DNA from: Octopus bimaculoides
Taxonomy: Eukaryota
Reading direction: 5' to 3'
Assembly: GCF_001194135.2 (NCBI RefSeq)
Contig: NC_069002.1
Span: 3,665,984-3,719,408, forward strand
DNA length: 53,425 bases
Under the pieces are notes generated by a model that saw only the letters and a list, made by a program, of their open reading frames with translations, searched no databases and was not told where the DNA came from. Both the position numbers and the translations under genes were made by a program. Below are positions 35,901 through 38,900 of the stretch, piece after piece; position 1 is the stretch's first letter, and each line of letters opens with the position of its first letter.

Positions 35901-38900
35901 CTCTGTCTCTGAAAAAAGGAAATACACGTTGGACAGTAGTCCTTGATATACAAAAAGACAGGATGGTCAAACCTGGAATGTCTATGATCATAAGTGCTCA
36001 ATCAAGGCGTCCAGAGGCTAAAAAACTATTAAATACAAATTAGTCTAAACAAAGCAGCAAGCTGGTAGAATCGTTAGCAAGTCCGACAAAATGCCTTGTG
36101 GTATTGCTTCTGGCTTTTCACATTTTAAGTTCAAATCCCACTGAGGTCAACTTTGCCTTTCATCCCTTCAGGGTCGATAGAATAAAGTACCAGTCAATGT
36201 AACCAACTTGTCCCCTCCTCTTCCCCTCAAAATCACTGGCCTTGAATCCTGCAACAGACCGGTGCCACATTCAGAGGACTGTTGTGATCTCAACCATGAG
36301 GCTGGTTACCATAGAAACCATGTAACCAGGACTCAAGCGAAAAGAAAAACTATCAGCTGATACAAATTTATTTCATTCTTTTGTCTGTCTGTGTGTCCCA
36401 TTAAAACTCAATTAATTAGCTGGTTAAACGATTGATTGATTGATTATTGGTTAAGTGTATAATCAATTGCTATTGGTTAGTTTACAGGTCGATGTAACCT
36501 TGTCTGTTGTAGGTCGTCCAAAGAAGAGTTGATCTGATGACTGCTGAAGGTATAGAATTTAAAACCAATATCAATGTTGGCAAAGATGTCTCAGCTGTAG
36601 AACTACACCGGAAACATGATGCTATGGTCCTCACACTTGGTTCCACTTGGCCAAGAGACTTAAAAATTCCAGGTAGACAACAACCCATCCTTGCTGTTTG
36701 TTGATGTGTGTGCTTCTTATGCTTAGTTTTGAGCATTTTTATACATCAGGCAGACACATGAGTTGTGCATCTTGTGAATTGTTCATCTTGTGAATTGTGA
36801 GTTGTACATCTTGTGAGTTGTCATATAGTTTTACATGTTATCATACTTTCTTGTGTTATGCAAGTCATGTGTTTTTATACAATCACTTATGTTGTTACAC
36901 TGTTCCATGTGTTACGATGTACATTGTCCTACGTGTTATCATGCAGTCTTTTATGTTGTCATACAAACCTGTCTGTCTTCCTGTAGTTCAACATGTTATA
37001 GTTCCATATATTACCGTGTGTGTTATCCTACACCAGTTATCATAGAGTCCATGTGCTGCCATCTAGTCCAACATGTTGCTTTATATCTTATATATATCAA
37101 CATGTGTTAATGTTTTCTCATGTAGTCTTCTAAATTCTTGCAGGACGTGAACTTGATGGAATCTATTTTGCTATGACATTCCTGTCAACCTGGCAAAAGA
37201 TTCAAGAATCCAACAGTTCTGACCAAAGTTCCATTTCTGCCAAAGACAAGAATGTTCTGGTGATTGGTGGTGGAGACACTGGCGTGGACTGTATTGGGAC
37301 ATCCCTGCGACAGGTATTTCTGACTCCTTCATCTTATATTTATTTCTCCCCACCTCTTGAGAGACTGCTACTTTATTCGCCACAGTGAACCTTTCTGATA
37401 TTTTGACGTAGGCGCAGGCTAAGCTGTATGGCTGTGAAGCAAATTTATGAGGCACATAACCAAGTGTGTACCTTTCTCTCACTTCCTCCTGAGTTTGTTC
37501 TGATCGAATCCTCCATGTGTTAACATGTGCCTTCTAACAACAGTGTAAACTTCATTTCATCAAGATATCCTCAGCCTAAAGAGTTCCCTGTGGTACACAA
37601 CTCTCTTGGATATTTACTACTTCCGATGTTCCGCTCACTATGAAATATTTATAGGCCGGATCATATATAAATAAATAAATGAAATAAATAAATTAATATA
37701 TATATAAATATATATATATATACAAATTAATAAATAAATAAATATATATATAAATAAATATATATATATATATAAATANNNNNNNNNNNNNNNNNNNNNN
37801 NNNNNNNNNNNNNNNNNNNNNNNNNNNNNNNNNNNNNNNNNNNNNNNNNNNNNNNNNNNNNNNNNNNNNNNNNNNNNNCGAGCAAAGACTCAGAAACATG
37901 TCCCTGAATGCTGGCTAGGCTGAGTGGAAGAACTTGTCTTCCCCTCGCAAACTTAAGGACACAGTAATTGTGTCAATGCCGACAGGAAGCGGTCCAGTTT
38001 CCTAGGGCTAAATGGCAGTATTGTGTTCTCTTATTGGGATTGTCACATTAAGTTGACAATATACTACAACTTTATCGCTCCACTACTGCTTAAATCTCTC
38101 CGAGAGATTTAGAAATATTGTATTTCTAATTTTGCTGATCAGTGAATAAATTTCACTATGATTTATATATGTTTGCGAAGGCGAAACGGGCTTCTCTATC
38201 CGGCTAGCAAGCTACTTCACGCTGATGACGAACAAAGACTCAAAAACATGTCCCTGAATGCTGGCTAGGCTGGGTGGAGAAGCTTGTCTCCCCCTTGCAA
38301 ACTTAAGGACACAGTAATTGTGTCAAGGCCGACAGGAAGCGGTCCAGCTTCCTAGGGCTAAACGGCAGTAGTGTGTTCCCTTATTGGGATTGTCACATTA
38401 AGTTGACAATATACTACAACTTTATCGCTCCGCTACTGCTTAAATCTCTCTGAGAGATTTAGAAATATTATATTTCTAAATTGCTGATCAGTGAATAAAC
38501 TTCACTATGATTTATATAAGTTTGCGAAGGCGAAACGGGCCTCTCTATCCAGCTGGTAAGCTACTTCACGCTGGTGACGAGCAAAGACTCAGAAACATGT
38601 CCCTGAATGCTGGTTAGGCTGGGTGGAGGAGCTTGTCTCCCCCTCGCAAACTTAAGGACACAGTAATTGTGTCAAGGCCGACAGGAAGCGGTCCAGCTTC
38701 CTAGGGCTAAACGGCAGTAGTGTGTTCCCTTATTGGGATTGTCACATTAAGTTGACAATATACTACAACTTTATTGCTCCACTACTGCTTAAATCTCTCT
38801 GAGAGATTTAGAAATATTATATTTCTAATATATATATATATATTTATTTATTTATTTATTTATAATTGTATTTATATATATGTATAAATATAAGTATAAA

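What the first reader, a model, noticed from the sequence alone, without database searches (positions are those of the whole stretch)
37879..38828. Substitution pattern in the 350-bp unit preserves a multi-hairpin RNA fold
Seen, stems in each unit: GACACA/TGTGTC; AGGAAGC-GGTCCA-GCTTCCT; GCCG/CGGC; GCAGTAGTG/CACTACTGC; TTGTCA/TGACAA; AAATCTCTC/GAGAGATTT; TAGAAATA/TATTTCTA; GTGAA/TTCAC; GGAGA/TCTCC. By hand count, units 1 and 2 differ at about 24 positions, about 20 of them transitions. Many differences fall in loops or swap Watson-Crick for G-U pairs: all four helix I differences between junctions 2 and 3, GCTTCCT versus GTTTCCT, CGGC versus TGGC. Unit 1 rebuilds one hairpin in a shifted register (GGAAGA/TCTTCC). 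A few changes do break pairs. Inference: the unit evolves as a structured RNA, not a plain DNA satellite. A/G and C/T polymorphism could partly be retro-copied deamination, but a general transition bias also produces G-U-compatible changes.
Basis: partly seen in the sequence, partly recalled or inferred. Interest (0 to 1): 0.7.

Follow-up and report, generated by a model that had tools for sequence, protein, structure and literature searches.

The report
Decayed hammerhead retrozyme array, octopus intron
A short tandem repeat in an octopus gene intron is a worn-out copy of a small mobile RNA element carrying a self-cutting hammerhead ribozyme; relatives in another octopus keep its hairpins through paired mutations, but the differences between the repeats here look like ordinary mutational decay.

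Summary
The counts are right. The array is 2.7 units of 349/350 bp, and units 1 and 2 differ by 24 substitutions (20 transitions) plus one indel.

The unit is a structured-RNA element. A type I hammerhead ribozyme (HHR) spans each unit junction on the + strand, and the monomer folds far better than shuffles (z = -6.8).

The substitution pattern within the array does not show this:
- 18 of 24 changes hit stems (16.9 expected).
- Half of those break pairs.
- No pair changes on both sides.
- Unit 1 is no more stable than unit 2 carrying 24 random same-type mutations.
- 15 of 18 polarised changes are GC->AT, with no A>G excess.
- Both complete HHR cores carry an inactivating change.

The real support comes from elsewhere. 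Eight diverged relatives lie in 142 kb of Octopus vulgaris DNA. They keep the central hairpins through compensatory changes: 20 of 39 pairs, against 5-11 in slid controls and 0/500 shuffles. One relative carries a collinear HHR with all helices re-paired, and another has a 12-bp target-site duplication.

Verdict: a decaying insertion of a non-LTR retrozyme, a new member of a known kind. Rfam finds no HHR, and no read data could be used.

The parts
37879..38831 (+). Tandem array of at least 2.7 units of 349/350 bp. The left end is cut by an assembly gap, so the true copy number is unknown.
   Evidence: TRF period 349, 94% matches. blastn finds no other copy in the window.
37879..37902 (+). Last 24 nt of a preceding unit: hammerhead helix II, the GAAA box and helix III, all canonical.
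   Evidence: Identical to the end of unit 2.
37903..38252 (+). Monomer A (350 nt), cut at the predicted ribozyme site. It is the most decayed unit.
   Evidence: 13 of 18 polarised changes are in A. Circular MFE -93.5 kcal/mol, z = -3.4.
38253..38601 (+). Monomer B (349 nt). It folds into a long closing stem plus a multi-hairpin central domain.
   Evidence: Circular MFE -122.6 kcal/mol, z = -6.8. The minus strand gives -112.7, z = -5.6.
38602..38828 (+). Monomer C, truncated at unit position 227, where the array meets (TA)n.
   Evidence: Linear O. vulgaris relatives end near the same unit position.
38200..38273 (+). Hammerhead at junction A|B. Helix I 2.x strand with UAC bulge at 38200-38221. 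CTGATGA at 38222-38228. Helix II region at 38229-38242 (GAA/CTC, one pair broken). 'GAAA' box reads AAAA at 38243-38246 (G12>A). Helix III at 38246-38251. Cleavage is predicted after C38252. Helix I 1.x strand at 38253-38273.
   Evidence: Pairs checked by script. Core listing.
38549..38622 (+). Hammerhead at junction B|C. CTGGTGA at 38571-38577 (A6>G). Helix II GAG/CAAAGA/CTC within 38578-38591. GAAA at 38592-38595. Helix III A-C[AU]G-U at 38595-38600. Cleavage is predicted after C38601. Helix I has three G-U pairs in its third segment.
   Evidence: Descriptor hit. Pairs checked.
38308..38440 (+). Central domain of unit B, whose hairpins covary across the family: GACACA/TGTGTC, GGCC/GGCT enclosing AGGAAGC/GCTTCCT, and GGCAGTAGTG/CGCTACTGCT enclosing CCC/GGG and ATTGTCA/TGACAAT.
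   Evidence: 20 of 39 pairs change on both sides in alignment A3.
38442..38478 (+). Two 3'-proximal hairpins of unit B (AAATCTC.../...GAGATTT and TAGAAATA/TATTTCTA), lying just before the element's DNA 3' end at unit position 227.
   Evidence: The second hairpin is kept in L006 with an A-U > G-U change.
37663..37778 (.). AT-rich microsatellite (ATAA/ATAT)n on the left, followed by a gap of 100 N (37779-37878).
38828..38906 (.). (TA)n(ATTT)n microsatellite abutting the truncated last unit, followed by a gap of 285 N (38907-39191). It is inverted relative to the left microsatellite.
   Evidence: (I15).
37140..37313 (+). Upstream flanking exon of the host glutamate synthase gene (...[20 protein letters not shown]).
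   Evidence: Pyr_redox_2 profile positions 2-158.
39192..39293 (+). Downstream flanking exon ([15 protein letters not shown]...), whose start is lost in the gap.
   Evidence: Pyr_redox_2 profile positions 208-274 continue downstream.

Best explanation
The array is a short, decaying tandem insertion of a small non-autonomous retroelement that carries a type I hammerhead ribozyme. This kind of element is called a metazoan (non-LTR) retrozyme. It lies in an intron of an octopod glutamate synthase gene.

Shown:
- Each unit junction has, on the + strand, a long interrupted helix I with a U/UAC internal loop six pairs from the core.
- The junction also has CUGAUGA, a 3-bp helix II capped by CAAAGA, GAAA, a minimal helix III (A-U plus C-G around AU, inside the palindrome ACAUGU) and a GUC cleavage triplet.
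- The rest of the unit folds into a long closing stem plus several hairpins.
- Diverged relatives in Octopus vulgaris keep those hairpins and the hammerhead helices through compensatory changes.
- One relative is a 5'-truncated insert with a 12-bp target-site duplication.
- Another has an inverted truncated copy abutting it.

Inferred, from published work on this class:
- Multimeric transcripts self-cleave. This probably needs two adjacent ribozymes pairing through the palindromic helix III, as in newt and axolotl.
- The unit-length RNA is circularised by the host RtcB ligase.
- It is then copied back into DNA by a Penelope-like reverse transcriptase, with a preference for AT-rich microsatellites.
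- Selection for the fold acts on the RNA while the family is active.

Once inserted, this copy has evolved neutrally. Its units differ by GC->AT-biased changes that fall on stems, loops and the catalytic core alike. Both complete ribozyme cores are now inactivated (G12>A plus a broken helix II pair in one, A6>G in the other).
For: Hammerhead:
- A descriptor search (at most one core mismatch) hits junction B|C. It hits nothing in the other 52 kb on either strand, and 9 of 2000 shuffled arrays.
- The helices were verified by script.
- Each deviant core base is canonical in another copy.
- GAAACATGTC^ is identical to the axolotl Ax330 retrozyme hammerhead, and loop 2 is CAAAGA against CAAAAA. Unit size matches mussel (353) and axolotl (330/353). 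[quoted passage not shown]

Fold: z = -6.8.

Family:
- nhmmer finds 8 relatives in 142.5 kb of O. vulgaris.
- On a structure-blind MAFFT alignment, 79.4% of cells pair, against 33-44% when partners are slid.
- 20 of 39 pairs change on both sides, against 5-11 slid and 12.6 +/- 1.9 shuffled (0/500).
- The covariation score is 0.226, against 0.04-0.09.
- The O. vulgaris copies alone pair at 69.8%, against 32-42%.
- L005 has a collinear hammerhead with the same 14-nt helix II spacing, the UAC bulge and re-paired helices I, II and III. It lies 109 nt upstream of the central domain, against 104 nt in the unit.

Mobility:
- A filled and an empty site with a 12-bp duplication.
- An inverted abutting copy, which is a Penelope-like hallmark, as is microsatellite targeting.

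Neutral decay of this copy.

Octopod origin. Intron position.
Against: - Rfam's hammerhead models give no hit, even at E <= 10 on 111-nt slices.
- Neither complete junction passes the published CUGANGA / GAAAY / RUH filter.
- Helix II closes with a C.A mismatch, and helix I has a fixed C.C at 1.2-2.2.
- My descriptor is loose, with 7 places in 285 kb of O. vulgaris strand.
- The full-length pairwise alignment of L005 to the unit is not significant on its own.
- The relatives fall into a few subfamilies, so cells are not independent events.
- G-U (17) against A.C (24) in the relatives does not identify the strand, or RNA rather than DNA.
- No reverse transcriptase gene is in the window.
- The O. 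vulgaris relatives sampled are solo copies, not tandems.
Confidence: 0.8

Rival explanations
1. One reading: the differences between the units of this array were filtered by selection on RNA pairing, or partly copied from deaminated RNA. On this view the within-array substitution pattern is itself evidence of a structured RNA.
For: - All 4 stem changes specific to units 2 and 3 keep pairing.
- All four helix I differences between the junctions keep pairing.
- Unit 1 re-forms one hairpin in a shifted register, which only 3% of random placements match.
Against: - Stem hits, kept-pair fraction and the MFE of unit 1 all sit at the random expectation.
- 0 of 116 pairs change on both sides.
- The stem against loop comparison gives P = 0.50. 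The core is hit at 2 of 13.
- 15 of 18 polarised changes are GC->AT, and C>T 7 against G>A 6 is symmetric.
- A>G occurs only twice.
- The register-shift result is one post hoc test among about nine stems.
Confidence: 0.1
2. The locus is a currently active retrozyme source. Units hidden in the assembly gap have intact ribozymes, and the array releases 349-nt circular RNAs from the host pre-mRNA or from its own transcript.
For: - The 24-nt fragment after the gap has a canonical helix II and GAAA box.
- Copy number is unknown because of the 100-N gap.
- Unit 2 is still very stable.
- If the scaffold is right, the array is in sense orientation in a transcribed intron.
Against: - Both junctions that can be read carry a change at an invariant core base, A6 or G12.
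- Units differ by 2-7%, so the insertion is not young.
- A preprint on vertebrates reports such elements depleted from introns.
- No reads could be examined.
Confidence: 0.1
3. The element is the same, but the array arose differently. The tandem is a Penelope-style partial tandem, or a multimeric linear-template insertion, of a SINE-like hammerhead element. It would be primed at a fixed 3' end, with no circular RNA stage.
For: - The array stops at unit position 227 against (TA)n.
- Linear O. vulgaris copies end near positions 217-227, are 5'-truncated and have a target-site duplication.
- One has an inverted abutting copy.
- Penelope-like elements make partial tandems and inverted copies, and target (TA)n.
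- The sampled relatives are solo, not tandem.
Against: - Head-to-tail complete units of ribozyme-site length are what rolling-circle copying of a circle gives.
- The published members of the class do form circles.
- The inferred termini rest on few copies, and the L005 5' end is tentative.
Confidence: 0.25
4. The array is a plain satellite or palindrome-rich DNA repeat. Its self-complementarity would matter at the DNA level or be accidental, and the hammerhead resemblance would be chance.
For: - There is no Rfam hit.
- The minus strand also folds well, z = -5.6.
- G-U against A.C gives no strand signal in the relatives.
Against: - The hammerhead architecture recurs in L005 with different helix sequences and the same spacing.
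- Helix III is identical to a proven retrozyme ribozyme.
- Relatives are dispersed inserts with a target-site duplication, not satellite blocks.
Confidence: 0.03

Closest known systems
Metazoan non-LTR retrozymes (Cervera & de la Pena, Nucleic Acids Res 2020, PMC7229834), e.g. mussel Mg353 and axolotl Ax330/Ax353
   Same: - Tandem units of about 330-353 bp, with GC below 50%.
- One type I hammerhead per unit, at the junction.
- A highly self-paired monomer.
- Helix III GAAACAUGUC^ identical to Ax330, with a CAAANA-type loop 2.
   Different: - There is no detectable sequence homology outside the ribozyme.
- The host is an octopod. No paper in the held library links retrozymes to cephalopods.
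- That paper treats the minimal one-pair helix III with a palindromic loop as amphibian-typical and says invertebrate ribozymes usually have a longer helix III. L005 does have 3 bp.
- Both readable cores here are dead.
- Circular RNA was not tested.
Newt satellite 2 / HHR_Amex1 hammerhead (dimer-dependent)
   Same: - A one- to two-pair helix III inside a palindrome (ACAUGU), so two neighbouring ribozymes can form a stable joint helix III.
- A weak base of helix II, comparable to the U.U mismatch reported for HHR_Amex2.
   Different: C.A rather than G-C or U.U at positions 10.1-11.1, and a C.C mismatch at 1.2-2.2. Activity is untested.
Schistosoma Sm-alpha SINE-like hammerhead elements (from my own knowledge, not checked here)
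   Same: - A non-autonomous element of about 335 nt, both dispersed and tandem.
- A type I hammerhead whose helix I has a U/UAC-type internal loop six pairs from the core, contacting a CAAAUA-type loop 2.
   Different: I found no convincing pol III A and B boxes by eye. No sequence comparison was run.
Penelope-like elements and their pLTR hammerheads (PMC8557442; Cervera & de la Pena 2014)
   Same: 5'-truncated copies, an inverted truncated copy abutting a direct one, partial tandems and AT-microsatellite targets. [quoted passage not shown]
   Different: There is no reverse transcriptase or GIY-YIG open reading frame here. The hammerhead has a long helix I with the loop-loop motif. It is not the minimal Penelope-type variant (legend of Fig. 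S1).
Plant LTR retrozymes and viroid-like circular RNAs
   Same: Small, highly paired RNAs processed by hammerheads.
   Different: Those have type III ribozymes, and LTRs, a primer binding site and a polypurine tract (retrozymes) or autonomous RNA replication (viroids). None of these is seen here.

Membership tests
Type I hammerhead ribozyme | Conserved core boxes CUGANGA and GAAA(Y) intact in the copy | tested here: not met
   Junction A|B reads CTGATGA but AAAAC (G12>A). Junction B|C reads CTGGTGA (A6>G) but GAAAC. Every deviant base is canonical in another copy, so the inferred ancestor meets the feature.
Type I hammerhead ribozyme | RUH cleavage triplet following helix III | tested here: met
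   GUC^C at all three sites; AUC^U in L005.
Type I hammerhead ribozyme | Three helices around the core, with helix I open and helices II and III capped, supported by covariation | tested here: met
   Window helices were verified. The L005 homologue re-pairs helix I (three segments), helix II and helix III with different sequence at the same spacing. This rests on two lineages only.
Type I hammerhead ribozyme | Internal loop in helix I positioned to contact loop 2 | tested here: inconclusive
   A U/UAC internal loop lies six pairs from the core, and loop 2 is CAAAGA/CAAGAA, in both the window and L005. The match to the canonical motif is from memory, and no 3D or functional test was made.
Type I hammerhead ribozyme | Match to the curated covariance model (Rfam Hammerhead families) | tested here: not met
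   No hit at gathering score, at E <= 1, or at E <= 10 on 111-nt slices.
Type I hammerhead ribozyme | Self-cleavage activity | not testable with these tools
   Needs in vitro transcription.
Metazoan non-LTR retrozyme | Head-to-tail repeats of about 170-400 bp, each with a type I hammerhead | tested here: met
   349/350-bp units, at least 2.7 copies, with a ribozyme at each junction. The cores are degenerate.
Metazoan non-LTR retrozyme | Low GC (<50%) and no LTR, PBS or PPT | tested here: met
   GC is 0.41-0.44. No terminal repeats appear around the array or the solo copies. PBS and PPT were not searched formally.
Metazoan non-LTR retrozyme | Target-site duplication longer than 4 bp | tested here: met
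   A 12-bp duplication flanks L010:5811-5934, with an empty paralogous site. This cannot be tested for the window array because of the gaps.
Metazoan non-LTR retrozyme | Expressed as unit-length linear and circular RNA | not testable with these tools
Penelope-like element (autonomous) | Reverse transcriptase plus GIY-YIG endonuclease ORF | tested here: not met
   No such ORF is apparent by eye among the 61 ORFs of at least 90 aa in the window; they were not scanned against Pfam. The unit has only ORFs of up to 48 codons.
Penelope-mobilised non-autonomous element | Insertion signatures: 5' truncation, inverted abutting copy, microsatellite target | tested here: met
   L010 has a direct plus an inverted truncated copy. 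L010b, L004b and L006 are truncated. The window array is flanked by AT microsatellites. These signatures are described in PMC8557442. The link to a specific enzyme is inference.
SINE (pol III-transcribed) | Internal A and B boxes or a tRNA/5S/7SL-derived head | tested here: inconclusive
   No Rfam tRNA, 5S or 7SL match in the array. Inspection by eye found no good A or B box. No dedicated scan was run.

The most novel reading that the evidence does not exclude
The covarying multi-hairpin central domain, which ends in a hairpin at a fixed DNA 3' terminus (unit position about 227, where this array stops against (TA)n), may be the module that the mobilising Penelope-like reverse transcriptase recognises and primes from. 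On this reading the hammerhead only sets unit length. The array records target-primed copying that began at that terminus and ran more than twice around a circular or multimeric template. That would give a first sequence-level handle on how animal retrozymes are primed and why their non-ribozyme part is structurally conserved.
Probability: 0.2. Interest if true: 0.65.

Novelty: new member of a known kind. Interest (0 to 1): 0.4.

Why it matters
The finding places an octopod repeat in the class of hammerhead-bearing circular-RNA retroelements. It also shows compensatory evolution across the non-ribozyme part of such an element, with a target-site duplication and Penelope-like insertion signatures.

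It carries a caution as well. Transition-biased differences among a few tandem copies mimic 'structure-preserving' evolution. The test has to be made across diverged family members and against a mutation-spectrum null.

The practical value is modest. It gives a repeat-annotation entry for cephalopod genomes, and a candidate system for asking what the structured domain of animal retrozymes does.

Tried and rejected
No read or circular-RNA evidence was possible, and read laying was not used.
- Rfam: there were no hammerhead hits at any threshold. Only sub-threshold miRNA-like hits appeared (E 0.015-6, all far below gathering score), which I dismissed as chance.
- More copies through proteins: the exact ORF look-up and the homologue search with the unit's 36-40-aa ORF found nothing. 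Look-ups of neighbouring window ORFs, tried to reach an ungapped copy of the locus, also found nothing.
- Public DNA scans: two metagenome and four viral scans with unit and ribozyme patterns were empty.
- The one bacterial-genome hit is a chance 20-mer in a T-box-like leader.
- A relative's GOGAT contigs (L001/L002) are unrelated to the repeat.
- Energy of unit 1 evaluated on unit 2's structure: discarded. The evaluation does not penalise non-canonical pairs properly and gave a value below the MFE.
- RNAalifold's single compensatory pair 30-290: rejected as evidence, because slid controls give the same count.
- L010:17012-17073 nhmmer hit: it lies in a zinc-finger array and is noise.
- nhmmer with window units alone does not reach L005, and the pairwise L005 alignment is not significant. 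The L005 ribozyme assignment rests on motif, spacing and the family-profile hit.
- G-U against A.C counts to identify the functional strand: uninformative.
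Full report
WHAT IS THERE

Tandem Repeats Finder reports one long-period array in the window, at 37879-38831: period 349, 2.7 copies, 94% matches.

- It sits on a 1,028-bp contig bounded by assembly gaps, N at 37779-37878 and at 38907-39191.
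- AT-rich microsatellites lie on both sides.
- The left end of the array is cut by the gap, so the copy number is a minimum.
- No other copy, even a weak one, is in the window.

THE RIBOZYME

On the + strand each unit junction has the layout of a type I hammerhead. In 5' to 3' order:

- A helix I strand ending ...AGC-UAC-UUCACG.
- CUGAUGA.
- C-GAG-CAAAGA-CUC-A (helix II).
- GAAA.
- C-AU-G-U (helix III).
- C, with cleavage predicted after it.
- The other helix I strand, CCUGAA-U-GCU-G-GCUAG-G-CUGG.

A script check confirms the helices:

- Helix I has four paired segments, with a U/UAC internal loop six pairs from the core.
- Helix II has three pairs.
- Helix III has two pairs, inside the palindrome ACAUGU.

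I cut the array at the predicted site into three monomers:

| Monomer | Coordinates | Length |
|---|---|---|
| A | 37903-38252 | 350 nt |
| B | 38253-38601 | 349 nt |
| C | 38602-38828 | 227 nt, truncated |

Neither complete ribozyme is intact.

- A|B has the canonical CUGAUGA, but AAAA in place of GAAA (G12>A) and a broken helix II pair.
- B|C has GAAA and an intact helix II, but CUGGUGA (A6>G).
- From general knowledge of this ribozyme, both positions are invariant and needed for catalysis.
- Each deviant base is canonical in another copy, so the ancestor had a perfect core.

How specific is the assignment?

- A loose descriptor (at most one core mismatch) hits B|C. It hits nothing in the remaining 52 kb on either strand, and 9 of 2000 shuffled arrays.
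- Rfam does not recognise the motif at any threshold I tried. This is a real weakness of the assignment.
- The published axolotl retrozyme Ax330 reads ...CTGAGGAGGTCCAAAAAGGCCGAAACATGTC^TGGGG. That is the same GAAACAUGUC helix III and a near-identical loop 2.
- The same paper describes this one-pair helix III with a palindromic tetraloop. It notes that such ribozymes cleave poorly alone and well as dimers.
- Its mussel and axolotl units are 353 and 330/353 nt.

THE FOLD

As a circle, monomer B has an MFE of -122.6 kcal/mol against -85.4 +/- 5.5 for dinucleotide shuffles (z = -6.8). The minus strand gives z = -5.6, and monomer A gives -93.5 kcal/mol (z = -3.4).

The fold is a long closing stem, which extends helix I, plus a branched set of hairpins.

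- GCCG/CGGC is replaced by GGCC/GGCT.
- AAATCTCTC/GAGAGATTT is really 8 bp with a 3-nt loop.

Measured against B's fold:

- 18 changes lie in stems. Random placement of the same base changes gives 16.9.
- 9 keep a pair and 9 break one (null kept 7.8, P = 0.37).
- A's MFE is no better than that of B carrying 24 random same-type mutations (null mean -96.6, P = 0.66).
- Substitution density is 18 of 232 in stems against 6 of 117 in loops (Fisher P = 0.50).

The pair-count tool finds 0 of 116 pairs changed on both sides, 9 one-sided and 9 broken. RNAalifold finds one compensatory pair (30-290) by shifting the register, but slid controls give the same count.

Polarising changes with the third copy gives C>T 7, G>A 6, G>T 2, A>G 2 and T>C 1.

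- 15 of 18 are GC->AT.
- The spectrum is symmetric between strands.
- There is no A>G excess, so there is no sign of copied A-to-I or one-strand C-to-U editing.

Two further points:

- Unit A carries 11 of the 16 polarised changes in the part covered by all three units (star-tree test P = 0.01). B and C therefore share a later ancestor.
- The ribozyme core is hit at 2 of 13 positions, against 22 of 336 elsewhere.

All four helix I differences between the junctions keep pairing. Unit A also rebuilds one hairpin in a shifted register at almost no cost in energy, which 3% of random placements achieve. Both are small and post hoc.

On this array alone, the pattern is what a GC->AT transition bias produces.

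WHERE THE SUPPORT REALLY COMES FROM

A repeat-derived ORF of the window matches almost only Octopus vulgaris proteins (7 of 8 hits). Several repeat families of the window are 82-91% identical to O. vulgaris DNA. The window is therefore octopod.

I fetched seven 20-kb O. vulgaris loci for that purpose. A profile of the unit, and then of the growing family, found eight diverged relatives in 142.5 kb.

I aligned them with the three units using MAFFT, which knows nothing of structure. The alignment is A3, covering unit positions 52-192. I then laid the unit's hairpins on it:

| Measure | Structure | Partners slid 1-3 columns | Shuffled |
|---|---|---|---|
| Cells forming a pair | 79.4% | 33-44% | 71.5% (0/500 reach 79.4%) |
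| Pairs changed on both sides | 20 of 39 | 5-11 | 12.6 +/- 1.9 (0/500 reach 20) |
| Covariation score | 0.226 | 0.04-0.09 | 0.142 +/- 0.014 (0/500 reach 0.226) |

Examples of pair types:

- AGGAAGC/GCTTCCT becomes GGAGAC/GTCTCC (pairs 37-48 and 38-47 swap A-U and G-C).
- ATTGTCA/TGACAAT becomes CTAGCCA/TGGCTAG (96-113 U-A to A-U; 98-111 U-A to C-G).
- Three pairs of the long-range GCAGTAGTG helix switch between G-C and A-U.

The O. vulgaris copies alone, which did not define the structure, pair at 69.8% against 32-42% for slid partners.

Caveats:

- The copies fall into a few subfamilies, so cells are not independent events.
- G-U (17) against A.C (24) in these old copies does not tell the strand, or RNA from DNA. 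The strand comes from the ribozyme.

A SECOND HAMMERHEAD

One relative, L005, extends upstream and carries a collinear ribozyme:

- CCACUA | CUGAAGU | GAUC-CAAGAA-GAUC | GAAA | UU-ACAU-GA-U | C^ | UGGUGG...
- Helix II has the same 14-nt spacing as in the window.
- The UAC bulge is the same.
- Helix I has three fully paired segments of different sequence.
- Helix II has 4 bp and helix III has 3 bp.
- Its core starts 109 nt before the central-domain match, against 104 nt in the unit.
- It too has one core change (A9>U).

The descriptor's background in these loci is 7 places in 285 kb of strand. A hit at the right distance and orientation is therefore unlikely by chance, roughly 5 in 10,000 by my estimate. 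The full-length pairwise alignment of L005 is not significant by itself.

MOBILITY

- L010:5811-5934 is a 124-nt, 5'-truncated copy flanked by a 12-bp direct repeat (CTTTCTTATTTT). A paralogous copy of the surrounding repeat in L008 shows the empty site.
- At L010:20008-20345 an inverted truncated copy abuts a direct one.
- The sampled relatives are solo copies, not tandems.
- Linear copies end near unit position 217-227. The window's last unit stops at position 227 against (TA)n.
- 5' truncation, inverted abutting copies, partial tandems and (TA)n targets are described for Penelope-like elements.
- A 2026 preprint argues that animal retrozymes are their non-autonomous derivatives.
- No reverse transcriptase gene is in the window.

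CONTEXT

The window carries exons of a glutamate synthase gene on the + strand, from about 15.9 to 40.5 kb.

- The array lies in the intron that splits the Pyr_redox_2 domain. Profile positions 2-158 are encoded upstream and 208-274 downstream.
- The flanking exons end near 37313 and resume at 39192.
- As assembled, the ribozyme strand is the coding strand.
- The array contig lies between two gaps, and its AT-rich end is inverted relative to the left microsatellite (I15). Its orientation is therefore not secure.

HOW IT MOST LIKELY WORKS

Shown:

- The ribozyme architecture.
- The stable fold.
- Family-level compensatory change.
- The insertion signatures.
- The neutral-looking decay of this copy.

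Inferred from the published class:

- Multimeric transcripts self-cleave, probably with neighbouring ribozymes sharing a joint helix III.
- RtcB circularises the 349-nt RNA.
- A Penelope-like enzyme copies it back into DNA.

Selection for structure acts during that RNA phase. After insertion the copy drifts. An alternative route for the array is primed copying of a linear multimer from a fixed 3' end with no circle stage. I cannot exclude this, and I give it about 0.25.

NOVELTY AND VERDICT

This is a new member of a known kind. No paper in the held library connects retrozymes or hammerheads with cephalopods. The class is, however, reported from cnidarians to amphibians, including molluscs.

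Its inference is right about the nature of the element, but the evidence it cites does not support that inference.

Noticed in passing
window 15896-40502 (+): Exons of a glutamate synthase (GOGAT) gene: Glu_syn_central, Fer4_20 and Pyr_redox_2. The closest named relative is a scallop protein at 80% identity. The array sits in one of its introns.
   Followed up: partly
window 37663-37778 and 38828-38906; gaps 37779-37878 and 38907-39191: The 1-kb contig carrying the array lies between two N gaps. The left (AAAT/AT)n and right (TA)n(ATTT)n flanks are inverted relative to each other (81% complementary). The contig may therefore be flipped in the scaffold, which would change sense to antisense relative to the host gene.
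   Followed up: no
window 21678-21901 and 45341-45564: An inverted pair (98% complementary, 23 kb apart) of an abundant octopus SINE-like repeat (CATCATCAT...TTTAACGTCCGCTTTCCATGCTAGCATGGGTTGGAC). An ORF from one copy matches seven 'hypothetical' O. vulgaris proteins, which suggests repeat-derived gene models in that annotation.
   Followed up: partly
L006 8205-8300 (-): About 150 nt downstream of a partial copy of the unit lies CTGATGAG + TGGCTATATTT...AAATATAGCCA + CGAAAC. This is hammerhead-like, with a very long helix II. Helix III is not canonical and Rfam gives no hit.
   Followed up: partly
L007 about 7042-7088, both strands: An inverted pair of descriptor hits, AGATAACCGAAGAG...CATCTGAAACTCAGAGTTTTATCT. 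It could be another hammerhead-like repeat in O. vulgaris or a false positive.
   Followed up: no
L010 5811-5934 and L008 16020-16200 (-): Filled and empty paralogous sites: a 124-nt truncated copy of the family with a 12-bp target-site duplication, inserted into a copy of another repeat.
   Followed up: yes
L003 708-739 (Ornithinibacillus halotolerans): A 29-of-32-nt match to the GACACA/TGTGTC hairpin, in what looks like a T-box leader (GGGTGGTACCGCG follows). One exact 20-mer hit is the chance expectation in 596 Gb.
   Followed up: yes
window 28029-28185 and 28795-29051: Minisatellites of 23 bp (6.9 copies) and 21 bp (12 copies) within the span of the GOGAT gene.
   Followed up: no
L001 and L002 (ENA ERZ21867824): Two contigs from a metagenome assembly carry animal GOGAT exons 77% identical to the window's, with GC 0.32-0.33. 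This looks like eukaryotic host DNA in a metagenome. They share no repeat with the window.
   Followed up: partly
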